From: Mobula birostris
Taxonomy: Eukaryota
Direction: 5' to 3'
Length of the DNA stretch: 64,000 nucleotides
NCBI RefSeq assembly: GCF_030028105.1
Contig: NC_092375.1
Location: forward strand, 33,269,130 to 33,333,129
Shown here piece by piece: positions 5,585 through 61,925 of the stretch; position 1 is the first letter of the stretch, and each line of letters opens with the position of its first letter. The notes beneath the pieces are model-generated. The model saw only the letters and a list, made by a program, of their open reading frames with translations. It made no database searches and was not told the origin of the DNA. Made by a program: the position numbers and the translations under genes.

Positions 5585-6291
5585 CAGTCACCCCTCCTTA
5601 TCCGCGAGGGATTGGTTCCGAGACTCCCTGCAGATACCAAAAAACGCAAATACTCAAGTCCCTTATTTAACCTGTCTCAGTGCAGGTGGACTTTAGGACC
5701 TGGGGCAGCACAGGGCCCACCGCCCCCAGTGTTTCTNNNNNNNNNNNNNNNNNNNNNNNNNNNNNNNNNNNNNNNNNNNNNNNNNNNNNNNNNNNNNNNN
5801 NNNNNNNNNNNNNNNNNNNNNNNNNNNNNNNNNNNNNNNNNNNNNNNNNNNNNNNNNNNNNNNNNNNGGGAACGCTAATCTTTAAGTTCTTGAGGCTCTA
5901 GTGCTTTACATAGCCAGCCAGTCATCCCTAGCACGAACACTTCCATGAATTTCAGCTTCTTTCTGCTTTATTGTATGAATGCTCGAGTCGTTCTTACCGA
6001 CCTTACGGCTCACTTCGGAATGCCACATGCCACTTTTCAAAAGATCTAATATTTCTAATTTCTCGGCGAGAGATAGCACTTTACCCTCCCTCTCAGCCTT
6101 TGAGGAATTGCTTTGACCACGTAATTGCTTTTTAGGTGTCATTTTTTCGCAGAAACAAAGTAGTGAACGAACGAAACACGAGGCGAACAATGCTCGAACA
6201 ACGAGTGCTGGAGAGAGAACTTCCAGGTTTTCCCAATTTGCGGTTGGTTGAATCCTCACGTGTGGAACTCGGGGATAAGGAGGGCCAACTG
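5585..6291 (-). mobile_element. Internally deleted Tigger/pogo-type DNA transposon
   Basis: TIRs CAGTCACCCCTCCTTATCCGCG and revcomp CAGTTGGCCCTCCTTATCCCCG; TA on both flanks. HTH_psq-like N-terminus MTPKKQ..KVLSLAEKLEILDLLKSG..SEVSRKVGKNDSSIHTI from ATG at 6142. Confidence 0.88.
5737..5867. other. Assembly gap or masked run (N)
   Basis: 131 consecutive N inside the Tigger-like element. Confidence 0.99.
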
Positions 6292-21877: not shown

Positions 21878-22497
21878 GTGGGAGGAGAAGATGGCGGCGC
21901 GCCAGTGTGTGCGCAGCCCTCCGGTGAAAAATGATATCGTATCTGTGAAAAAGGGGCCGTGGACAATTCTGATTTGATGGAGAATGGACATGAAAGCACA
22001 GAGGAACATCTGGAGAAATTTCTGAAACGCCCGTTCGCTGCTGTTGTTACTGTGTGGTTGGGAATCTTTCGGAGGGTAGGCCTCAAAATCCCCGGCCTTG
22101 CCTGCTTTTGGCGACCGAGAAGGAGGTCGAATCATTTGGACAGAGATGGTGCTCAGTACTCGGCGTCGGAGAGCTGACCAGAGCTCGAAGTTTTCAGATG
22201 ACTCAGAGTCGGATTGTGGTCGGCATGGCAGGGAGAGTTTTTCTTCCTTCTCCCGTCTGCGTGAGATGTGGGACATTTGAGAAACTTTGAACTTTACTGT
22301 GCTCACGGACTTCTTCATCAAGTTATGGTATTGTTACACTGTTTGTAACTATATGTTATAATTATGTGGTTTTGTCAGTTTTTTCAGTCTTGGTTTGTCC
22401 TGTGTTTTGTGATATCGTACCGGAGGAAATAATGTATCATTTCTTAATGCATGCATTACTAAATGACAATAAAAGAGGACTACGTGTCTTCATAATC
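21878..22497 (+). mobile_element. Non-autonomous non-coding retroposon, copy 1 (full length)
   Basis: Head ggaggagAAGATGGCGGCGC; AATAAA plus GAGGAC..GTCTTC hairpin and ataatc tail; homologous to 26996 and 46781. Confidence 0.85.
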
Positions 22498-26889: not shown

Positions 26890-28310
26890 TCCTGTACACA
26901 AGTATAAAGGGGACAAAATAATTGTCGGTCTGTATCTGATGCAGCACAGAAAAAGCACGATAAGATTTTAAAAAAACACAAGTATAGATACACAAGGAGG
27001 GGAGGAGAAGATGGCGGCGCAACGCAGTGCGCGCAGCCGCTCCGGAATGATATCGGTATTTGTTAAGTAGGTACCGTGCACAATCCTGATTTGATGGAGA
27101 CAGACGTGAGAAGCACTGAGGAACATCTGGAGAAACTTCTGAAATGCCCGCTTCGCTGCCGCTGCTACTGTGCGATCAAGAATCTCCGGAGGGGAAGGCC
27201 CAAATCCTCGGCTTTACCTACTGCCTGTTGCCGGGGCCGGGGTTGAAGCGCTCAGCAGAGATGGTGCTCGGTGCTCGGTGTTGGAGGGCTGGTCAGAGGC
27301 TCGAAGTTTTCAGATGGACTCAAGAGTCGGCTGCTTCCAGGGTGCTGCATCGGCAAGTTTGTGGCACTGGAAGTTCATGGCAGGGAGAGTTTTTCTTCCT
27401 TCTACTGCCTGCGTGAGATGATGGGACTTTGAGAGACTTTGAGACTTTTTTTTACCGTGCCCATGGTCTATTCTTTATCAAATCACGGTATTGCTTTGCA
27501 CTGTTGTAACTATATGTTATAATTATGTGGTTTTTGTCAGTTTTTTTAGTCTTGGTTTGTCTTGTGCTTCTGTGCTATCATTATGGAGGAACATTGTATC
27601 ATTTCTTAATGCACGCATTACTAACTGACAATAAGAGGACTGTGTGTCCTCATAATCTAATCTAATATAGATTAAATGTGTGTTGATAAAGTGATGCCAG
27701 GCTGTACACAAGGTAGCTGACAGGAAATAACAAAATAGTGGTGGAGTTAGTGGGTGGAGGTGTTTTTTCAGCCTTATTGCTTGGGGAAAGTAACTGATTT
27801 TGAGACTGATGGTTCTGGAGTAGATACTATGCAGCGCACCGCCCCCCCCCCCCCGACCCCATGGCAGTGGGACAAAAATCCATGAACAGGGTGGGTGGGA
27901 TCCTTCATGATGTTACTGGCCCTTTTCCGGCACCTTGCCGTATATTCGTCCTCGATGGTGGGTGGACTAGTGCCAGTAATGCACCAGTCAATTTGGGCGA
28001 CCTATTGTGCAGCCTTCCTGTCTGCAGCAGTACAGTTTCCTTATCAAGCAGTCACGCAGCTTGTCACAGTGCTCGTGTTTGAATATCATAGAATGAAATG
28101 ACTGTCGATGAGAAAAACCTCTTTAGAAAATAGAGGTGTTAGTGACCTTTCTGTGTAGGATGTCTCCTGAGACCATGAGAGGTTGTGTGTGATGTACGGT
28201 CCCATGAGTTTGAAACTGCTTGCATTTTCCACTGCTGTACTGCCAATGTAAATGGGGAGAGCTCTCTTGAAGCTGATGAACATCTCTTTTCCTGAACTGT
28301 GCCCCCGATC
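26890..28310 (-). mobile_element. Decayed Rex1/Babar-type LINE 3' part, interrupted by retroposon copy 2
   Basis: PIYIGSTAVENASSFKLMG.YITHNLSWS motif at 28086-28283. Confidence 0.65.
26996..27666 (+). mobile_element. Non-autonomous non-coding retroposon, copy 2 (second subfamily)
   Basis: Same head and 3' end as copy 1, (TAATC)n tail, divergent middle. Confidence 0.85.
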
Positions 28311-45153: not shown

Positions 45154-46240
45154 AGAACCCAGGCTGCAAAAATAGGGGACAAGCTCTCCTCTACAATCAC
45201 TCTGAGCACCGGTGCCCCACAAGGCTGTGTACTCAGAACCCTACTGTACTCACTCTACACCCATGATTGTGTAGCCAAGTTTCCATCAAACTCAATATAT
45301 AAGTTTGCTGATGACACAACAATTGTAGGCCGTATCTCAGGTAATGATGAGTTTGAGTACAGAGAGGAAATTAAGAACCTGGTGGCATGGTGCGAAGACA
45401 ATAACCTATCCCTCAACGTCAGCAAGACGAAGGAATTGGTTGTTGACTTCAGAAGGAGTAGCGGACCGCACGACCCAATTTACATCGGTGGTGCGCAAGT
45501 GGAACAGGTCAAAAGCTTTAAGTTCCTTGGGGTCAATATCACAAATGACCTGACTTGGTCCAACCAAGCAGAGTTCACTGCCAAGAAGGCCCACCAGCAC
45601 CTTTACTTCCTGAGAAAGCTAAAGAAATTTGGCCTGTCCCCTAAAACCCTCACTAATTTTTATAGATGCACCGTAGAAAGCATTCTTCTAGGGTGCATCG
45701 CAACCTGGTATGGAAGTTGTCCTGTCCAAGACCGAAAGAAGCTAGAGAAGATCATGAACACGGTGCAGCACATCACACAAACTAATCTTCCGTCCTTGGA
45801 CTCACTTTACACCGCACGCTGTCGGAGCAGTGCTGCCAGCGTAATAAAGGACACGACCCACCCAGCCAACACAGTTTTTGTCCCTCTTCCCTCCGGGAGA
45901 AGGCTCAGGAGCTTGAAGACTCGTATGGCCAGATTTGGGAACAGCTTCTTTCCAACTGTGATAAGACTGCTGAAAGGATCCTGACCCGGATCTGGGCCAT
46001 ACCCTCCAAACATCCGGACCTGCCTCTCGGTTTTTTTTTTTGCACTACCTTACTTTCCATTGTTCTATTTTCTGTTTATGATTTATAATTTAAATGTTTA
46101 TATTTTCTAATTTTTACTCTTTTTAATATTTTTAATATTTAATATTTGTACTCCAGGGAGCGGGAAGCGCAGAATCAAATATCACTGCGATGATTGTACG
46201 TTCTAGTATCAATTGTTTGGCGATAATAAAGTATAAAGTA
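45154..46240 (+). mobile_element. Young Rex1/Babar-type LINE inserted in Hero
   Basis: GAPQGCVL..YKFADDTT..SFKFLGV..PSGRRLRS; (GTATAAA)n tail; TSD TAAGGC at 45148-53 and 46241-46. Confidence 0.93.
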
Positions 46241-46780
46241 TAAGGCCTCGGTTCTGCACACTTCCAATGACAGGGGAATGCGAGTGCCAGGGATAGGCGA
46301 GACATGGTCCAGGCAGAGGTACGGAACCGCAACGATGAAAGGTAGTTATTGAAAGCAGTGGAGTTGGGGTCGCAGTGCATCTGGACAAAATGGAATCTTC
46401 CCAAGTGCAAGGTGATTTGGGCAGAACTTTGGAGACTGGAGCCCTTCCACATTTCTTTCCTCCTCCAGCCCATCTATCACACTCTCCCTACACCATCACA
46501 GCTGCACATATGCGGTCTGAGCGATGACTCTAACTGCAAGCTTTACGGTCAACGGGGTTCACTGACACACATTCTGTCAGGATACAGAACAGCTTTAACA
46601 TGAGGACAGTATAGGTGGTGACACAACAAGGTCCTGCTGTCCCTTGCTGACACACTGGAGCAGGAGAGGTGTAAAAAGAGACCAGCTGGCAGAGAGGCAA
46701 ACAGTCATTTTCATCAAGGAGAGGGCCATGGCAGTCATATCAAAGAGGCCTAAATCCAACATGCTGCAAACTGCCAAATC

Positions 46781-47100
46781 GGACGACTCGGAGTCGGACT
46801 GTGGTTGGGTATGGCAGGGAGAGTTTTCTTCCTTCTCCCGTCTGTGTGAGATGTGGGACTTTCGAGAGACTTTGAACTTTTTTTACTGTGCCATGGCCTG
46901 TTCTTCATCAAGTTATGGTATTGTTGCACTGTTGTAACTACGTGTTATAATTATGTGGTTTTTGTTAGTTTTTCAGTCTTGGTCTGTCCTGTGTTTCTGT
47001 GATATCACACCGGAGGAATATTGTATCATTTCTTAAAGCATGCATTACTAAATGACAATAAAAGAGGACAGCGTGTCCTCATAATCTCATCTATTCTAAT
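46781..47100 (+). mobile_element. Non-autonomous retroposon copy 3 (5'-truncated) inserted in Hero
   Basis: Matches 22197-22497; TSD CAAATC at 46775-80 and 47101-06. Confidence 0.88.
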
Positions 47101-47526
47101 CAAATCATGGGAGGCAAGTGTCAATGTGGTGAGGAAGCTGCAGTTCCCAGAAGTAGTGCAAACCACACCTTGATCAGATATCGTACTGTGGTCCACCAAA
47201 GACAAGAAAATCATCTGGTGGAGCTCACAGTACCATGGGAAGAAGAATGTGAGGAGGCTCATGAGAGGAAGGCACTAAATTACTAGTCCATAGTCCAGGC
47301 ATGGCATGGCTATTCCCCATAAAGATTGACTGTAGTGGGTTCCTGGAAAGGTCAATATGGAAGTTGCTGTCTGCACTGGGCCTTGATGGAAAGAACAAGA
47401 ACCAAGCAGCTCACAGGATGGGGGAGGAAGCAGAAAGAGCCTTGTGCTGGATATGGAGCAGGTGAGAGGAGTTGAGCTGGAAGTCAGGAGCAGGCGGGCA
47501 GTGACTTGGCCACCACTGCTGACTCG

Positions 47527-47595
47527 CCAACTGGAGAGTGTAGTAGTTAAGGGTCAGAACACTCAGTGAAGTTTGGGCACCACCTGATGATATCT
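47527..47595 (+). ncRNA. Putative non-circularly permuted hammerhead-like RNA in the Hero 3' UTR (decayed core)
   Basis: GAGUGU-A-GUAGU ... GGGUC-AGA-ACACUC ... ACCAC-CUGAUGA-UAUCU: three stems close around hammerhead core positions, but the GAAA box reads AGAA. Confidence 0.5.
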
Positions 47596-47699
47596 GCCCC
47601 GGCCAACAGCTATGGTTACCTCATCAAGTAACTGAAGAGAGCACCCCAATGTATGCTGCAAGCAAGTTACCACCCTATTGCCTCCTTTCAGCTTCAAAA

Positions 47700-48625
47700 A
47701 TACCACTGACTGGCTATGAGCATCATTGTCTATTATCAGTGTCAATATAACTTGAAAAAGGGATGAAGTCCTGCAGCATTTATAAGGCATTAGGTATAAG
47801 ATTTAAAAGCTGTATTTCTCAGGTAATAACCTGTGGATTACTTGTGCACAACAGCATTTGGAAAAAGAAGTAGGAGCAGCTGAATGGTAAGAGTGATGAT
47901 ACAAAGTGAGTGCTTTAAATTGATGAGGAATTGGGTCCAATTCAGGGAAAGTGAGTTGCACCTTACTAATGTCATCATGGGCAGATTTGTAGGTTTAAAT
48001 TATCCAGTTATGACAAGCTGAACATTGGTTCAGAAGACAGAAAAGGAGAACTCCAAATGGAAGGCAGAAAACTGGTAAGAGCCAAAAGGCAGGGCAAGGA
48101 AAGTATGAAAAATAAGCACAAAGAAAATAAGTAGGGAGATGCTTAATAATATATGTGAAAATGCAAGACCTATAGCAGATCAGAAAGATGACCTGAAGAT
48201 GCAGGTGGAAATTAGTCAGTTAGGGGTACACCAATGTGAAGGAATACACAATAATTGGAAGGTTACTGATGGACAGAAATACTTTGGGATATATGTCCAC
48301 AGATTCTTGAAGGTAGAAGGACTAGTATATAAAATGATTAGGATAGCGTGTAGGATGCTTTCCTTTGTTAGCTAAGCCATAGAGTACAGAAGCAGAAATA
48401 CTATGTGAGCAGAGAATACAATACTTGTTAAATCACTTGATTACTAAGCACAGTTCTGATCAATGTATTTCTAGGGACTCGCTGTAGAAATTTTTGAGAA
48501 GATTTATGAAGATGCTGCCAGAAGTGAACAGCTTAAGCTGTGGAAAAAAGATTAGAGAGGCTTAGAGTTGTTTTTCCTTGCAACTCAAGAAGCAGCAGTG
48601 AGACTTGATAGAGGTTTATACCCTG
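47700..48625 (+). mobile_element. Very old CR1 fragments
   Basis: FGIYVHRFLKVEG..KMIRIACRMLSFVS..IEYRS pattern. Confidence 0.55.
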
Positions 48626-52999: not shown

Positions 53000-55890
53000 G
53001 AGAATGGCTCTGGGGCAATGTTTTGTTCTGTATGTGAGATGTGAGGATTATGGGAGACCTCCAGCTTCCTGGATAGCCACATTTACACCAGGTACGCTGA
53101 GCTGCAGCTCCTCAGAGAATGAATTAAGGAACTGGGGCTGCAGCTCAATGATATCTGGCTCATAGAGGAGAAAGAGAAAGTGATAGATAGGAGCTACATG
53201 GCTGACAAGGGATATCAAAGCCAACATAAAATCAAAAGAGAGGTAGCATAATAGGACAAAAATTAATGGGAAGTTAGAGGATTGGGAAGCTTTTAGAAAC
53301 CAACAGAAGGCAACTAAAAAGTCATAAAGAAGGAAGAGATGGAATATGGAAATAAGCTAGCCAATAATATTAAAGAGGATACCAAAAGTTTCTTCAGAAA
53401 TATAAAGAGTAAAAGAAAGACGAGAGTAGATATTGGAACACTTGAAAATGATGCTGGAGAGGTAGTAATGGGGGGGGGGACAAGGAAATGATGGATGAAT
53501 TGACTAAGTATTTTGGGACTGTCTTCACTGTGGAAGACACTAGCAGTATGGTGGAAGTTCCAGAGTGTCAGGGGACAAAGTGAGTTCAGTTGCTATTACT
53601 AGAGAGAAGATCCTTGGGAAGGTGAAAGGTCTGAAAGTAAATAAGACACCAGGACCAGATGGTCTACTGAAGAAATTGTGGAGGCATTAGTAATGCTCTT
53701 TCAAGAATCACTAGATACTGGCATGGTTCTGGAGGACTGGAAAATTGCAAATGTCATCCTACTCCTCAAGAAGGGAGAAAGGCAGAAGAAAGGAAATTAT
53801 GGGCCAGTTACTCTGACCTCAGTGGTTGAGAAGATGTTGGAGTCCTTGGAGGTAGATGATAAAATCGGCCAAAGTTAGCATGGTTTCCTTAAGAGAAAAT
53901 CTTGCTGACAAATTTGTTAGAACTCTTTGAAGAAATAACAAGCAGGATAGGCAAAGGAGAATTGGTTGATGTTGTGTACTTGTACTTTCAGAAGGCTTTT
54001 GACAAGGTGCCACACATGAGCCTGCTTAACAACTTAAAAACCCATGGTGTTACAGGAAGAATACTAGCATGGATTGAGCATTGGCAGGAAGCAAAGAATG
54101 GGAATAAAGGGAGCCTTTTCTGGTTGGTTACCAGTGAATAGTGATGATTCACAGGTATCTGTGTTGGGAGCACTTCTTTATAAATTATATGTCAATGATT
54201 TGGATGAAAGAATTGATGGGCTTGTGGCCAGGTTTTCAGATGATACATGCATAGGTGGAGGTGGAGGTTTGAGGAAGCAGGGATGCTACAAAAGGACTTT
54301 GACAGATTAGGAGAATGGGCAAAGAAGTGGCAGATAGAATATAGTGTCGGGAAGTGTATGGTCATGCACTTTGGTAGAAGAAATAAAAGTGTAACACAAA
54401 CTATTTTCTAAATAGAGAGAAAATTCAAAAAATCTGAGCTGCAGAGGGACTTGGGAGTCCCGTGCAGGATTCCCAAAGGTTAATTTGCAGTTTGAATCTG
54501 TGGTGAGGAAGGCAAATGCAATGTTAGCATTAATTTCGAGAGGTTTAGAATATAAAAGCAAGGATGTAATGTTAAGACCTTTTAAGGCACTGATGAGGCC
54601 TCATTTGGTGTATTGTGAACAATTATACTTTCTACTTTATACTGTCACCAAACAATTGATGCTAGAATGTACAATCATCGCAGCAATATTTGATTCTGCG
54701 CTTCCCGCTCCCTGAATTACAAATATTAAATATTTAAAATATTAAAAATAGTAAAATGTAGTAAATATTAAAAATTTAAATTATAAATCATAAATAGAAA
54801 ATAGAAAATAAAGTAGTGCAAAAAAACCAAGAGGCAGGTCCGGATGTTTGGAGGGTATGGCCCAGATCCGGGTCAGGATCCTTTCAGCAGTCTTATCACA
54901 GTTGGAAAGAAGCTGTTCCCGAATCTGGCCATATGAGTCTTCAAGCTCCTGAGCCTTCTCCCGGAGGGAAGAGGGACAAAAAGTGTGTTGGCTGGGTGAG
55001 TCGTGTCCTTGATTATCCTGGCAGCACTGCTCCGAAGGCGTGCGGTGTAAAGTGAGTCCAAGGATGGAAGATTGGTTTGTGTGATGTGCTACGCCATGTT
55101 TATGATCTTTTGCAGCTTCTTTTGGTCTTGGACAGGACAATTTCCATACCAGGTTGTGACGCACCCTAGAAGAATGCTTTCTACAGTGCATCTATAAAAA
55201 TTAGTGAGGGTTTTAGGGGACAGGCCAAATTTCTTTAGCTTTCTCAGGAAATAAAGGCGCTGGTGGGCCTTCTTGGCAGTGAACTCTGCTTGGTTGGACC
55301 AAGTCAGGTCATTTGTGATATTGACTCCGAGGAACTTAAAGCTTTTGACCTGTTCCACTTGCGCACCACTGATGTAAATTGGGTCGTGCGGTCCGCTACT
55401 CCTTCTGAAGTCAACAACCAATTCCTTCGTCTTGCTGACGTTGAGGGATAGGTTATCGTCTTCGCACCATGCTACCAGGTTCTTAATTTCCTCTCTGTAC
55501 TCAAACTCATCGTTACCCGAGATACGGCCTACAATTGTTGTGTCATCAGCAAACTTATAGTTTGGGCCCCTATCCAAGAAAGGAGGTGATAACATTGGAG
55601 AGAGTTCAATGGACGTTTAAGAAAATGATTCTGGGATTGAAATGGTTATTATATGAACAACATTTGATAGCTCTGAGCCTGTACCCACTGGAATTCAGAC
55701 AAATGAGGGGAGATCTCACTGAAACACATGGTATATTGAAAGGCCTCGACAGAGTAGATTTGAAGAGGATGTTCCTTATGGTGGGTGAGCCTAAGACCAG
55801 AGGATACAGCCTCAGAACACAGGGATGTCCACTTAGAATAGAGATGAGGAAGAATTTCTTTAGCCAGAGAGCGGTGAATCTGCTGAATGT
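53000..55890 (+). mobile_element. Decayed CR1 (ORF1 piece, ORF2) split by a Rex LINE
   Basis: EDWKIANV, YFQKAFDKVPH, RFSDDT, MRPHLVYCEQ|FGPL.., resumes at 55559. Confidence 0.88.
54622..55558 (-). mobile_element. Young Rex1/Babar-type LINE, near-identical to 45298-46240
   Basis: YKFADDTTIVGRISGND..; same 3' UTR and tail. Confidence 0.94.
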
Positions 55891-58242: not shown

Positions 58243-61200
58243 TTTTCCTCTGAGCCGCACCCTTTCTAGTCAACCAGGTACTATGATGACATGAATCCAT
58301 CAACCAGTGATCCGTGTACACTGGACCACCTTCCAACATCCTGGATTCTGGAGATGCAGGTTCAGATGGATTGGTTGGTCTATGGACAACAGGCTTGAGG
58401 CAGGACACTCAATGTGATCCTGAGCAACATTGGCAGCTGGAGATGATAAGTGACTGGACTGATGTGTTGGGTGATCTTGAAGGGACTGATGAAACAGGAC
58501 ACGAGCTTGTGGGAGTCCGTGCACAGGTATAGATATCAGGTGGGCAGCCAGGCACTGTCTTCAGGCCAGAGTAGTCTGGCTGGGCACCAGTTGTGGTTGA
58601 CCTGGCAACTGTAGGCATAGTCGGCAGCTAAGATGGCCCTCCTTGCCCTCTTTCAAGTATTCCAGCATCGGCAAACCAGGACCCTGGTAAATGGGACCTC
58701 CACAGTTTGCTCCTCCATAGGGTACCTCGGGGATTGGAAGGAACAAAGGATGGAAGAGGAGGTGTAGATTGTGGGACAATTCTGCCCAAAGCAGATATTT
58801 CTTCCATGTGGAAGTGTTAGAGGCAGCAAAGCATCGTAAAAACTTCTCCACTTGCTGATTGGCTCTTTCCGACTGACTATTGGCCTGCTGATGATAGCCA
58901 GAGGACAAACTCACTGAAATGAGGAAGAGGGAGCAGAAGGCATACCAGAAGCGGGAGAGGAAGTTTATGCCCCGGTCTTTCACAATGTCCCGAGGGAAAC
59001 TTTGGAGGTAAACTACATGTTGGAGAACCAGATCCACCATCTTAGAAGCTGATGAAAGTTTGGAGATGGCAATGAAGTGGGCAGCCTTGGAGAACTGATC
59101 CAACAATATCATGATCACCCAACAAAAGGTGGCAAATATGTGATGGAATTTATAGCAATGTAGGACCACAGGCATCAAGGGATTTGGTAGAAGCCGTGGG
59201 ACCCAAAGGGCTGCTGGTTGGAAGAATTGGATTGGGCACAAACTGATGTACATTTGTGATCATTGTGGGCCACCAGAACAAGTGTTGCAGTAAATCCAGG
59301 GATTGTTTTGCACCTGGATGGCCAGAGAAGAGTCAGGAGTGAGCCCACTGGATTGCTTCAGAGAGCACAATGGCCAGCACATACGTTAACTGTGTCAGCT
59401 AGAGCAGGCTCATACTGTAGGGCCTGATGTATCGATTTCCCAAGCTCCCAGATGATTGGAGTGAGGATCTTTGAAGATGGAATGAGGGGCTGAGGGTCAA
59501 TCTTCATTTCTGCTGGATTGAACTGTCATGACAGTTCAGGACTCAGAACTCAGAACTAGGCAGAACTCAGCATGCTTTCCTTAAAGGAAAATCCTGCCTG
59601 ACAAACCTATTACAATTTTTTGAGGAAATTACAAGTAGGCTAGACAAGGGAGATGCAGTGGATGTTGTATATTTGGATTTTCAGAAGGCCTTTGGCAAGG
59701 TGCCACACATGAGGCTACTTTACAAGAGCCCATGGAATTATGGGAAAGTTACATATGTGGATAGAACATTGGCTGATTGGCAGGAAACAGAGAGTGGGAA
59801 TAAAGGGATCCTATTCTGGTTGGCTGCCGGTTACCAGTGGTGTTCCACAGGGGTCCGTGTTGGGGCCGCTCTTTTTACGTTGTACATCAACGATTATGGA
59901 ATAGATGGCTTTGTGGCTACGTTTGCTGATGATACGAAGATAGATGGAGGGGCCGGTAGTGCTGAGGAAACAGAAAGTTTGCCGAGAGACTTGGATAGAT
60001 TGGAAGAATGGGCAAAGAAGTGGCAAATGAAATACAATGTTGGAAATTGTATGGTTATGCACTTTGGCAGAAGAAATAAATGGGCAGACTATTATTTAAA
60101 TGGGGAGAGAACTCAAAGTTCTGAGATGCAACGGGACTTGTGAGTCCTCATGCAGGATACACTTAAAGGTTAACCTCCAGGTTGAGTCGGTGGTAAAGAA
60201 GGCAAATGCAATGTTGGCATTCATTTCTAGAGGAATAGAGTATAGGAGCAGGGATGTGATGTTTATGCTCTGTAAGGTGCTGGTGAGACCTCACTTGGAG
60301 TACTGTGGGCAGTTTTGGTCTCCTTATTTAAGAAAGGATGTGCTGATGTTGGAGAGGGTACAGAGAAGATTCACTAGAATGATTCCAGGAATGAGAGGAT
60401 TAACATATGAGGATCATTTGTCCGCTCTTAGACTGTACTCTTTGGAGCTTAGAAGAATGAGGGGGGACCTCATAGAAACATTTCGAATGTTGAAAGGCAT
60501 GAACAGAGTGGATGTGGCAAAGTTGTTTCCCATGATGGGGGAGTCTAGTACGAGAGGGCATGACTTAAGGGTTGATGGGCGCCCATTCAGAACAGAGATG
60601 CTAAGAATTTTTTTTAGCCAGAGGGTGGTGAATCTGTGGAATTTGTTGCCACGGGCAGCATTGGAGGCCAAATCACTGTATGTATTTAAGGCAGAGATTG
60701 ATAGGTATCTGAGTAGCCAGGGCATCAAAGGTTATGGTGAGAAGGCCGGGGAGTGGGACTAAATAGGAGAATGGATCAGCTCATGATAAAATGGCAGAGC
60801 AGACTTGATGGGCCGAATGGCCGACTTCTGCTCTTTTGTCTTATGGTCTTATGGACAGGGTGTCTTGGAGCTGGTTCAGTAGGAGATAGTGAAGTTGAAT
60901 TGCTCGAAGAGGACAAGTGAGCTTGATGTGGGTTGAGTTGGTGGGTCTGTTGTATGGATATGAAGTTCTGGTGGTTAGTCCAGATCAGGAAGAGTTCGGT
61001 GTTTCCCAATAGCCAACATCTCCTTTCCTCCAAGGCCTATTTAATGGCGACTTATTCCATCTCCTACTCTACAACAGCGGTGTGTGGGATTGAACTTGTG
61101 CGAGAAGGCAGCACAGGGTGTATCTTCTCATCCAATCTTCGACGGGAGAGGATGGCCCCAGTGCCCACATCAGGTGCATCCACCTCTACCACAAAATGTA

Positions 61201-61925
61201 TGGAGGGATTTGGATGGCGGAGAATGAGTGTTGGTGAAACATTTCTTGAGCTCTTCAAAAGCAGTAGCAGACCAAGTTATCCAAGAGTAGGTAAGAGGAG
61301 CAGTGATTTGGGTGTAGTTTCTGATGACATGGCAGTAGAGGTTGGAGAAGCCCAAGAAATGCTATAGCTGTAAGAGGGAGCGTGGTCGGGGCCAACCAAC
61401 AACAGCAGTCATTTTCTCTTGGTCCATGGTTATGCCTTGAGGTAGTTCTCTAACTTTCAGTACAGCTTGTTTTCAAGGAGATGCTGAAGCACTGAACAGA
61501 TGTGACAAATGAGGTCTTGGGGGTCTTTGGAGAATATGAGGATGTCATTGAGGTAGATGAACACATAACTGTGTAGCTGGTTCTGGAGGATCTCATGAAT
61601 GAAGGCTTGGAAAATGGCTGGGCTGTTGAAAGATCCGGAAGGCATCACCAAGTATTTGTAGTGACCAGTGGGTGTTATAAGCACTATCTTCCAGTCATCC
61701 CCTAGGATCAGGTTGTACACACTCCATAGATCCAGTTTGATGAAGATCTGGGCCCCACAGAGTGTTTCAATAGCACTATCCATCAAATGGAGGGGGTAGT
61801 AGTTCATGGTGATTTTGTTGAGTCCATGGTAATTAATGCAGGGACAGAAACCCATATCTTTCTTTATGACAAAGAAGAATCCTGCACCAGCTGGGGACTT
61901 GGATGATTGAATGAGGCTGTGTTGT
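58243..61925 (-). mobile_element. Chromoviral Gypsy pol remnant (RT, RNase H, integrase, chromodomain), split by a CR1
   Basis: CINYHGLNKIT..KLDL..YLVMP..YLNDILIFS; [15 protein letters not shown]; DQFSKAAHF..GYHQQANSQSERANQ; YLVD*KGCGSEE at 58243-58282. Confidence 0.9.
59535..60853 (+). mobile_element. Young 5'-truncated CR1, same subfamily as 35151-36470
   Basis: Near-identical RT and tail; TSD GACAG at 59530-34 and 60854-58; slippage filler (ACTCAGA repeats) at the 5' junction. Confidence 0.95.

What the first reader, a model, noticed from the sequence alone, without database searches (positions are those of the whole stretch)
47527..47595. Hammerhead-like RNA with swapped (non-circularly permuted) strand order in the Hero 3' UTR
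Seen: all three hammerhead strands are present just after the ORF, but in the order S1-S3-S2. Stem III is GAGUGU (47536-41) with ACACUC (47559-64), and the cleavage triplet would be GUA (47540-42). Stem I is GUAGU (47543-47) with ACCAC (47579-83, 4 of 5 pairs), followed by an exact CUGAUGA (47584-90). Stem II is GGGU (47551-54) with AUCU (47592-95). An extra helix CCAACU/AGU(U)UGG would clamp the long linker. The GAAA box reads AGAA, consistent with decay in this dead copy. Knowledge: normal types I-III are circular permutations, and stems I and II lie side by side, so a 3-nt link between them is plausible. I recall similar motifs in fish Hero 3' UTRs and reports of rearranged hammerhead-like RNAs, but cannot verify either here. 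Inference: a pseudoknotted ribozyme-like module that defines the RNA 3' end or is the RT recognition element.
Basis: partly seen in the sequence, partly recalled or inferred. Interest (0 to 1): 0.85.

Follow-up and report, generated by a model that had tools for sequence, protein, structure and literature searches.

The report
Rearranged hammerhead-like RNA in retrotransposon tail
Right where the gene of a dead jumping element ends lies a worn-out copy of a strongly conserved, knotted RNA fold that carries every hallmark of a hammerhead self-cutting RNA in an unusual strand order, a form not yet described in animal genomes.

Summary
This copy is decayed, but the motif is real. A covariance model built from relatives finds it at 47484-47608 (89.5 bits, E 2e-23) and in 72 of 80 related loci, always just after the reverse-transcriptase/endonuclease ORF.

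Six helices covary: 88.8% of cells pair against 32-43% with slid partners, and 0 of 500 shuffles reach this. The unpaired letters are the hammerhead core: CUGAnGA, GAAA, and U-H with no G at position 17. All three are intact in 41 of 73 hits.

The window reads AGAA. In other copies of the same genome, about 90% of contig depth has A at 47557 and about half has G at 47556.

The true partner is upstream, GACUC 47521-25. CUGAnGA runs instead into a helix made with the last codons, so stem II sits in a four-way junction.

This is a new variant of the type-SGC permuted hammerhead (Eckert 2023). No cleavage test was possible, and no paper in the held library describes it. First readers flagged the same motif in five other windows of this genome.

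The parts
47107..47504 (+). C-terminal endonuclease-like part of the retrotransposon ORF. In this copy it is broken by a frameshift near 47285-47300 and an in-frame stop at 47463-65. The family's stop codon is TGA 47502-04.
   Evidence: phmmer gave 95 relatives at E<=1e-3, and intact ones end ...SWKxxxxGQ*. The stop lies in P0 columns in 35 of 72 loci.
47487..47496 (+). P1, 5' strand (GGAGCAGGCG), made of the last sense codons. It pairs with 47591-47600.
   Evidence: All 10 pairs show changes on both sides, with 78.2% of cells paired. MFE folds of three intact relatives recover it. In this copy 8 of 10 pairs remain, read.
47497..47520 (+). P0 hairpin: GGCAGTG 47497-503, loop 47504-13, CACTGCT 47514-20. 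It holds the stop codon.
   Evidence: 95.7% of cells are paired, and 5 of 7 pairs change on both sides.
47521..47525 (+). Stem II, 5' strand (GACTC). G47521 is G10.1. It pairs with 47551-55.
   Evidence: On A3, 92-93% of cells are paired. On A4 the figure is 92%, and this helix was not in the model's structure. Nine distinct fully paired 5' strands were found.
47527..47532 (+). Helix IV (clamp), 5' strand CCAACT. It pairs with 47571-76.
   Evidence: All 6 pairs change on both sides, with 86.9% paired. Eight distinct fully paired 5' strands were found.
47536..47542 (+). Stem III strand of block S (GAGTGT, U16.1 = 47541) plus H17 = A47542. The predicted cleavage is between 47542 and 47543.
   Evidence: Stem III is 93.7% paired. 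Position 17 reads C 37, U 20, A 12, G 0, with 4 gaps, in 73 hits.
47543..47547 (+). Stem I, 5' strand (GTAGT). A47545 breaks a pair.
   Evidence: All 5 pairs change on both sides. At 47545 other copies of this genome read G in 1942 of 2013 depth (run X1).
47548..47550 (+). Three-nucleotide link (TAA) from stem I to stem II.
   Evidence: The link is 2-7 nt long in the 49 rows of A3.
47551..47555 (+). Stem II, 3' strand (GGGTC). C47555 is C11.1.
47556..47559 (+). Place of G12-A13-A14-A15.1. It reads AGAA here, so two core letters are wrong.
   Evidence: GAAA is present in 57 of 73 hits. In same-genome copies, 47557 reads A in 517 of 580 depth and 47556 reads G in 292 of 573 (X1).
47559..47564 (+). 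Stem III strand of block G (ACACTC).
47571..47576 (+). Helix IV, 3' strand (GTTTGG). T47572 breaks a pair.
   Evidence: At 47572 other copies read G in 458 of 519 depth (X1).
47579..47583 (+). Stem I, 3' strand (ACCAC).
47584..47590 (+). CUGAUGA box (C3 to A9), intact in this copy.
   Evidence: CUGAnGA is present in 59 of 73 hits. The n position reads U 43, A 14, C 7, G 2.
47591..47600 (+). P1, 3' strand (TATCTGCCCC), directly after A9.
   Evidence: At 47591 other copies read C in 342 of 404 depth (X1).
47601..47665 (+). Rest of the 3' UTR, with a hairpin at 47614-19/47628-33. The element ends near 47665.
   Evidence: The hairpin is read from the sequence only. Summed contig depth falls to about 6 after 47674, and loose ends sit at 47662 and 47665.

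Best explanation
**What it is.** The stretch 47487-47600 is a decayed copy of a conserved RNA domain. The domain sits at the boundary between the ORF and the 3' UTR of a family of non-LTR retrotransposons. These elements carry a reverse transcriptase, a zinc knuckle and a C-terminal restriction-like endonuclease ('Hero-like').

**The fold in intact members.** Six helices form. The unpaired letters between them are exactly the hammerhead catalytic core, each next to the right helix:
- U16.1-H17 lies between stem III and stem I.
- GAAA lies between stem II and stem III, with a G10.1-C11.1 pair.
- CUGAnGA follows stem I.

**The strand order.** From 5' to 3' the order is: P1-5', hairpin P0, stem II-5', clamp-5', block S, a 2-7 nt link, block G, clamp-3', stem I-3' with CUGAnGA, then P1-3'.

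This is the cyclic order of the type-SGC permuted hammerhead, but opened between A9 and G10.1. After A9 the chain enters P1, a helix made with the last codons. Stem II is reached from the other side through hairpin P0, which holds the stop codon. The core, P1, P0 and stem II thus meet in a four-way junction.

**Shown:** the fold, the core letters and the decay of this copy.

**Inferred:**
- Intact members cut themselves after H17 (window 47542|47543).
- P1, P0 and the stem II strand lie in or within about 20 nt of the last codons. A ribosome finishing the ORF should therefore keep the ribozyme unfolded, so cutting, or protein binding to the fold, would wait until translation of that RNA has stopped.

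**This copy.** It cannot cut. G12 and A13 are changed, and stem I, the clamp and P1 each carry mismatches.
For: - **Position and recurrence.** The model hits the window at 89.5 bits, E 2.3e-23. It hits 72 of 80 loci fetched by protein similarity alone, each just after the ORF.
- **Covariation, A3.** 88.8% of cells pair against 31.9-43.3% for slid partners. 32 of 39 pairs change on both sides. The score is 0.457 against 0.057-0.113, and 0 of 500 shuffles reach it.
- **Covariation, A4.** Stems I and II were left out of the model's structure, yet 91.2% of their cells pair against 20-43% slid.
- **Distinct haplotypes.** There are 5 to 11 distinct fully paired 5' strands per helix.
- **Core letters in 73 hits.** CUGAnGA is present in 59, GAAA in 57, U-H in 63, and all three in 41. 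Position 17 is never G and n varies freely.
- **Independent hint.** Gene calls that read through the UTR show L-[M/R/T/K]-T, which fits CUG-AnG-AC.
- **Same genome.** Most contig depth carries the pairing or core letter where the window differs, at 47545, 47557, 47524, 47572 and 47591. About half carries G at 47556.
- **Folding.** MFE folds of intact relatives recover P1 and P0, with z-scores of -2.6, -4.1 and -1.3. The window copy scores z = +0.13.
- **Published topology.** Eckert et al. 2023 validated by experiment a hammerhead with S-G-C order, a link of about 3 nt and a clamp helix (sections read).
Against: - **No cleavage evidence.** Only assembled contigs were on offer, and these cannot show RNA ends.
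- **Intact template.** Contigs from runs guessed to be RNA span 47542/43 uncut. All genomic copies carry the part downstream of the cut, so the RNA that gets copied is intact.
- **No precedent for the branch.** A break of the chain between A9 and G10.1 has no precedent that I could find. [quoted passage not shown]
- **Rfam.** No hammerhead model matches, either in the window or in 7 intact loci.
- **Penelope-like precedent.** In a Penelope-like element, hammerhead cleavage was not needed for insertion in vitro, and no RNA-seq ends were seen at the site (passages read).
- **Selection caveat.** The A3 rows were picked with a CTGA.GA-plus-GAAA filter, so core invariance there is circular. Only the A4 tally is unbiased.
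- **Translation coupling.** This is inference from positions alone.
Confidence: 0.7

Rival explanations
1. The fold is real but is not a working ribozyme. It would be the 3' UTR handle that the element's own reverse transcriptase grips for target-primed reverse transcription. It keeps a hammerhead-shaped core only as architecture, or cuts only with protein help and without consequence.
For: - R2-type enzymes bind a pseudoknotted 3' UTR RNA (abstract of PMC12222951, seen in the listing).
- In a Penelope-like element the hammerhead is protein-assisted and dispensable for insertion in vitro.
- The domain sits within about 165 nt of the element's 3' end, and copies are made from uncut RNA.
Against: - Every catalytic letter is kept, not just the helices. 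G12, A13, A14, C3 to A9 and a non-G at position 17 are all conserved, while n varies freely.
- A mere scaffold would not need all of these.
- The two roles do not exclude each other.
Confidence: 0.22
2. The hammerhead resemblance at 47527-47595 arises by chance in a random stretch of a dead repeat.
For: - CTGATGA is common: 15 in the window.
- The helices are short.
- The GAAA box is wrong in this copy.
- Folding energy is no better than shuffles, z = +0.13.
- There is no Rfam hit.
Against: - The same arrangement is found in 72 of 80 loci that were chosen by protein alone.
- All helices covary.
- The loose descriptor hits 0.015 times per shuffled window.
Confidence: 0.01
3. The conservation after the stop codon reflects protein coding, through a longer ORF or read-through peptide, and not RNA structure.
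For: Some gene calls run through the region, and their tails look alike (P0001, P0008, P0012).
Against: - Those tails are in different frames.
- Intact relatives stop inside P0.
- The changes are paired across helices.
- The one freely varying letter, n, changes the amino acid (M, R, T or K).
Confidence: 0.02

Closest known systems
Type-SGC (HRIMA-1) non-circularly permuted hammerhead ribozymes, Eckert, Friedrich, Weinberg & Weinberg, NAR 2023 (PMC10085705; abstract, section 13 and passages read)
   Same: - The block order is S, G, C.
- A short link runs from stem I to stem II: 'typically three nucleotides' there, 2-7 nt here and 3 nt in the window.
- A helix ties the far sides of stems I and II together.
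- The same core letters are conserved.
- The core holds at least two pseudoknots.
   Different: - There, stem II's 5' strand follows CUGAnGA directly. Here it lies upstream of block S.
- Here CUGAnGA runs into an extra helix, P1, made with the ORF's last codons.
- Hairpin P0 completes a four-way junction here.
- Theirs were found in metatranscriptomes, and none came from genomes of known organisms except one weak type-GCS candidate. Here the motif is DNA-encoded in animal retrotransposons.
Classic hammerhead ribozymes, types I-III (Rfam hammerhead families)
   Same: The core letters match, and each is placed correctly relative to stems I, II and III. The pairs G10.1-C11.1 and A15.1-U16.1 are kept, and position 17 is never G.
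   Different: - The strand order is not a circular permutation of the classic form.
- The chain is interrupted at A9/G10.1.
- No Rfam 15 model matches at E<=1 (7 intact loci) or E<=10 (window).
Hammerheads of Penelope-like elements and retrozymes (Cervera & de la Pena 2014, cited; PMC11167929 passages read)
   Same: A hammerhead-type motif is carried by a retroelement and overlaps an ORF boundary. Its role in the mobility cycle is unclear.
   Different: - Those are minimal classic-order motifs in pseudo-LTRs, near the start codon.
- Their retroelement class has a GIY-YIG endonuclease.
- Here the motif is a permuted form at the stop codon of an element with a restriction-like endonuclease.
HDV-like ribozymes of R2 and other non-LTR retrotransposons (Eickbush 2010 and Ruminski 2011, cited; not read)
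   Same: A self-cleaving ribozyme belongs to an R2-group non-LTR element, and the cut lies near the ribozyme's own 5' side.
   Different: The ribozyme class differs. Those sit at the 5' end and free the element RNA from a co-transcript, whereas this one sits at the ORF/3' UTR boundary.

Membership tests
Hammerhead ribozyme (core definition) | CUGAnGA directly 3' of the stem I strand | tested here: met
   Window 47584-90 is intact. The box is present in 59 of 73 model hits, and n varies: U 43, A 14, C 7, G 2.
Hammerhead ribozyme (core definition) | GAAA between stem II and stem III, with C11.1-G10.1 and A15.1-U16.1 pairs | tested here: inconclusive
   The family meets it: GAAA in 57 of 73 hits, G-C at 10.1/11.1 in 40 of 49 rows, and U-A at 16.1/15.1 in 42 of 49. 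The window copy does not meet it, since it reads AGAA at 47556-59.
Hammerhead ribozyme (core definition) | Cleavage-site U-H (H not G) joining stem III to stem I | tested here: met
   The window has U47541-A47542. U-H is intact in 63 of 73 hits, with no G at position 17.
Hammerhead ribozyme (core definition) | Stems I, II and III supported by covariation | tested here: met
Hammerhead ribozyme (core definition) | Chain continuous from A9 into the stem II strand (10.1) | tested here: not met
   The nucleotides after A9 pair with the ORF end as P1. They do not pair with the strand before GAAA. G10.1 comes from upstream, at 47521.
Hammerhead ribozyme (core definition) | Site-specific self-cleavage | not testable with these tools
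   Only contigs were available, and there was no bench.
Type-SGC permuted hammerhead (Eckert 2023) | Blocks in the order S, G, C with a short stem I to stem II link and a clamp helix | tested here: met
   The order was read. The link is 2-7 nt. The clamp is 86.9% paired, with 6 of 6 pairs changed on both sides.
Type-SGC permuted hammerhead (Eckert 2023) | Block C uninterrupted: stem I strand, CUGAnGA, then the stem II strand | tested here: not met
   The paper's assumption was read.
Hero clade of R2-group non-LTR retrotransposons | Reverse-transcriptase phylogeny placing the element in Hero | not tested
   No named Hero reference was available. Shown only: RVT_1 in longer relatives, a CX2C...HX4C knuckle, and RPD / ELTVPWE / ERK..KY motifs seen by eye in A1.
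Rfam hammerhead families | Match to a curated covariance model | tested here: not met
   There was no match in the window at E<=10 or in 7 intact loci at E<=1. A permuted form is expected to miss.

The most novel reading that the evidence does not exclude
Intact members are active ribozymes of a hammerhead topology not described before. The topology has the SGC-class order opened between A9 and G10.1, with stem II set in a four-way junction whose other arms are the last codons and the stop-codon hairpin. These would be the first non-circularly permuted ribozymes encoded in animal genomes. They are kept in retrotransposons whose relatives come from fish, amphioxus and bivalves. Their folding, and hence cutting, would be gated by the ribosome leaving the ORF.
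Probability: 0.45. Interest if true: 0.9.

Novelty: new variant of a known kind. Interest (0 to 1): 0.8.

Why it matters
- **Where such ribozymes occur.** Non-circular permutations of ribozymes were known only from environmental RNA of unknown hosts. If the family cleaves, such forms would also exist as ordinary genomic DNA in animals.
- **What a hammerhead can tolerate.** The core would survive a branch at the A9/G10.1 step. Current search descriptors assume this is impossible, which would explain why it was missed.
- **Retrotransposon biology.** A conserved catalytic-looking RNA straddles the stop codon of R2-group elements. That gives a concrete, testable link between translation, RNA cutting and choice of template.
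- **Annotation.** Model R1, or a pseudoknot-aware successor, marks the 3' end of this family in many animal genomes.

Tried and rejected
- **Rfam.** Rfam at permissive thresholds found nothing relevant, in the window or in intact relatives.
It was tested and rejected.
- **A downstream closing helix.** I first thought a downstream 'CAGU' stretch closed the domain. A closer look showed a local hairpin (P0) plus P1, and only these were tested.
- **A classic type-II reading.** This would be GAAA, then a stem III hairpin, then a stem I hairpin, then CUGAnGA. I rejected it by eye because it leaves 3-bp stems and an A-A clash at 15.1/16.1.
- **The search for related loci.** It found nothing in viral contigs.
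- **RNA ends.** All 24 runs offered are assembled contigs, so RNA ends, strand and level could not be read.
- **Depth profile.** The depth profile was not interpreted, as the tool advises.
- **High-depth RNA-guess contigs.** In X22 and X9 these are mostly one 5'-truncated copy inside a longer transcript. I do not claim that intact copies are expressed.
- **No tandem second copy.** I looked for a second copy of the domain, which would allow unit-length processing. There is one hit per locus, and only a noise hit elsewhere in the window (61152-61257, E 0.82).
- **An earlier four-stem hammerhead.** I had a memory of one in Perreault 2011 (PMC3088659). Term searches in that paper did not bear it out.
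- **Literature for prior description.** The searches were:
  - hammerhead + Hero + non-LTR: 0 papers
  - type-SGC + hammerhead: 1 paper, Eckert
  - hammerhead ribozyme + non-LTR retrotransposon + UTR: 12 papers, none on this by listing
  - Hero + NeSL + ribozyme + retrotransposon: 5 papers, none by listing
  - hammerhead + restriction-like endonuclease: 1 paper
  - hammerhead + non-circular + permut + retrotransposon: 4 papers
  
  The library lacks most subscription journals, and supplements were closed.

Full report
**1. The observation**

The exact CTGATGA is no evidence on its own. It occurs 10 times on the + strand and 5 times on the - strand of the window, and CTGANGA occurs 54 times.

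I wrote a descriptor as loose as the instance. It asks for these features:
- block order S, G, C
- a 6-bp stem III
- at least 4 of 5 pairs in stem I
- a 4-bp stem II with G-U pairs allowed
- at least one of three GAA letters

It hits 0.015 times per window in 200 dinucleotide shuffles, and never with an intact GAA. The descriptor was fitted after the fact, so it counts for little.

Rfam at E<=10 gives four weak, unrelated matches in 46500-48500 and no hammerhead.

**2. The setting**

The stretch follows the C-terminal domain of a broken retrotransposon ORF.
- phmmer with 66 residues (47265-47462) found 95 proteins at E<=1e-3.
- Intact relatives end ...CW[LI]W..R....W(K)xxxxGQ*. The family's stop is therefore TGA 47502-04, not the private stop at 47463-65.
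- Longer relatives carry RVT_1.
- Alignment A1 shows by eye a CX2C...HX4C knuckle and RPD / ELTVPWE / ERK..KY motifs. This fits an R2-group element with a restriction-like endonuclease.
- I could not test the label 'Hero'.
- Sources name relatives from a piranha, an oyster, an amphioxus, a mussel and a gar.
- The copy is also split by two nested repeats.

**3. A first hint from proteins**

Some gene calls read through the stop, and their tails resemble the window's UTR in three frames. Across them the box region reads L-M-T, L-R-T, L-T-T or L-K-T. That fits CUG-AnG-AC with a free n. The GAAA region reads V-E-T or S-K-H, which fits GAAAC. This was only a lead.

**4. Real DNA**

- In 49 of the 80, a CTGA.GA with a GAAA within 60 nt upstream lies about 130 nt after the protein match.
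- 48 of these are distinct in the region, because L032 equals L002.
- By eye they fall into about six sequence groups that differ in every helix but keep the same plan.

**5. The fold**

On the MAFFT alignment A3 (window plus 48 loci) I wrote a six-helix structure with pseudoknots and counted pairs.
- 88.8% of 1830 cells pair, against 31.9-43.3% when partners are slid by 1-3 columns.
- 32 of 39 pairs show changes on both sides.
- The covariation score is 0.457 against 0.057-0.113.
- 0 of 500 shuffles reach any of the five measures.

| Helix | Cells paired | Distinct fully paired 5' strands |
|---|---|---|
| P1 | 78.2% | 11 |
| P0 | 95.7% | 11 |
| stem II | 92-93% | 9 |
| clamp (helix IV) | 86.9% | 8 |
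| stem III | 93.7% | 5 |
| stem I | 93.3% | 10 |

**6. An unbiased set**

The A3 rows were chosen with the two boxes, so their invariance there is circular. To get round this I built covariance model R1 from the nested helices only and searched all 80 loci and the window.
- It hits 72 loci. Three of the eight misses have only 2 nt after the protein match.
- It hits the window at 47484-47608 (89.5 bits, E 2.3e-23).
- One noise hit lies at 61152-61257 on the - strand (E 0.82).

On its alignment A4 there are 73 hits without the noise row:
- CUGAnGA is intact in 59, GAAA in 57, U-H in 63, and all three in 41.
- 62 have letters in both boxes.
- Position 17 reads C 37, U 20, A 12, G 0, with 4 gaps.
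- The n position reads U 43, A 14, C 7, G 2.

Frequent defects are CGAAAC to CAAAAC, plus deletions. These are what dead genomic copies should show.

Stems I and II were not in the model's structure, yet 91.2% of their cells pair on A4, against 20-43% slid.

**7. The anatomy**

Window coordinates are given in the parts list. From 5' to 3' the order is:
1. P1-5' (last codons)
2. P0 hairpin (holds the stop codon; 35 of 72 loci have their first in-frame stop in its columns)
3. stem II-5' (starts with G10.1)
4. clamp-5'
5. stem III strand, then U16.1-H17
6. stem I-5'
7. a 2-7 nt link
8. stem II-3' (ends with C11.1)
9. GAAA
10. stem III strand
11. clamp-3'
12. stem I-3'
13. CUGAnGA
14. P1-3'

In five of the six groups P1 follows A9 without a gap, P0 follows P1, and stem II follows P0. 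In one group, 4 nt separate A9 from P1. Four helical arms thus meet where a classic hammerhead has the continuous step from A9 to G10.1.

**8. This copy and its family in the same genome**

Laying contigs of four runs at 80% likeness shows hundreds of family copies. The table gives the share of summed contig depth that reads a different letter from the window.

| Place | Change | X1 (organism A, DNA) | X5 (organism B, DNA) | What it affects |
|---|---|---|---|---|
| 47545 | A>G | 1942 of 2013 | 3412 of 3490 | stem I |
| 47557 | G>A | 517 of 580 | 1080 of 1198 | core |
| 47556 | A>G | 292 of 573 | 546 of 1198 | core |
| 47524 | T>C | 2158 of 2208 | 5579 of 5697 | stem II |
| 47572 | T>G | 458 of 519 | 1068 of 1304 | clamp |
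| 47591 | T>C | 342 of 404 | 692 of 903 | P1 |
| 47588 | T>C | 259 of 404 | 422 of 903 | the free n |

The remaining depth at 47556 would be explained by CpG decay, which is my inference.

The window copy therefore deviates from its family exactly where the fold or the core needs another letter.

Family depth ends near 47665, so the predicted cut lies about 120 nt inside the element.

MFE folding agrees. Three intact relatives recover P1 and P0 (z = -2.6, -4.1, -1.3). The window copy folds no better than shuffles (z = +0.13).

**9. How it most likely works**

Shown: a conserved knotted fold whose unpaired letters are the hammerhead core in the right places.

Inferred, at about 0.65: intact members cut after H17.

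Inferred from position only, at about 0.2-0.3: P1, P0 and the stem II strand lie within the last codons and the first 20 nt or so after the stop. A terminating ribosome would then keep the fold open, and cutting or protein binding would follow the end of translation.

What the cut is for is open. It would part the ORF from the last 120 nt or so, which carry the 3' end that R2-type enzymes use. It could therefore limit templates, release a short 3' RNA, or be a side activity of a protein-binding fold.

Against a simple end-defining role, copies always include the part after the cut. A Penelope-like element gives a precedent for a hammerhead that is dispensable for insertion in vitro.

**10. Comparison and novelty**

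The plan matches the type-SGC hammerhead of Eckert et al. 2023 in order, short link and clamp helix. It differs in that stem II's 5' strand has moved to the front and the gap is bridged by P1 and P0.

That paper states two relevant things:
- Known hammerhead alignments have no long insertion next to CUGAnGA.
- Its motifs were not found in genomes of known organisms, apart from one weak type-GCS candidate.

Six literature searches found no description of a hammerhead in Hero or other restriction-like-endonuclease elements. A November 2026 paper's introduction lists only hammerhead, HDV-like and twister motifs linked to retrotransposons in general, and cites Eckert for 'alternative permutations'. 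The library is partial and supplements were closed.

The scan's first readers flagged the same idea in five other windows of this genome. I did not see their sequences.

**11. Verdict**

The locus itself is a dead copy. The family motif is a new variant of a known kind and worth bench work.

Noticed in passing
window 45293-46037 and 54820-55564: A 745-nt inverted repeat pair, 95% complementary. The first arm is nested inside the Hero-like copy and holds a 200-aa ORF (45382-45984) with RVT_1 and ALKBH8_N hits. This is a fragment of another LINE family.
   Followed up: partly
window 46969-47064 (also 22380-22475, 27542-27637): A second nested repeat, 85% like its reference copy, splits the endonuclease-like domain of the copy.
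   Followed up: no
window 47614-47633: A further hairpin in the 3' UTR (GGTTAC / GTAACT), downstream of the ribozyme-like domain. Group-A relatives show a hairpin at the same place with other letters. It was not tested for covariation.
   Followed up: no
window about 47445-47665, in runs X22 and X9: Runs guessed to be RNA, from two organisms, each hold a high-depth contig of about 1.7 kb. It is made of a 5'-truncated family copy plus the same flank beyond 47665. Its C box differs at 47587-89. This looks like an old copy sitting inside a host transcript shared by both species.
   Followed up: partly
loci L007, L031, L060, L066, L071, L074; window 47588-89: The commonest core defects are CGAAAC to CAAAAC and CUGACGA to CUGACAA. 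Both are CpG-to-CpA changes, as expected for methylated dead copies.
   Followed up: partly
L002:1849-1973 and L032:1850-1974: These two identical loci carry a second exact CTGATGA, in the linker between stem III and the clamp. It overlaps the clamp strand.
   Followed up: no
loci of group D (e.g. L053:1738-1865): In this group 4 nt separate A9 from P1. In addition, GAUC after the box can pair with the stem II 5' strand GAUCC in the MFE fold. This is a possible alternative, inactive conformer.
   Followed up: no
window 5737-5867: A run of 131 N, either an assembly gap or a masked stretch. It was left alone.
   Followed up: no
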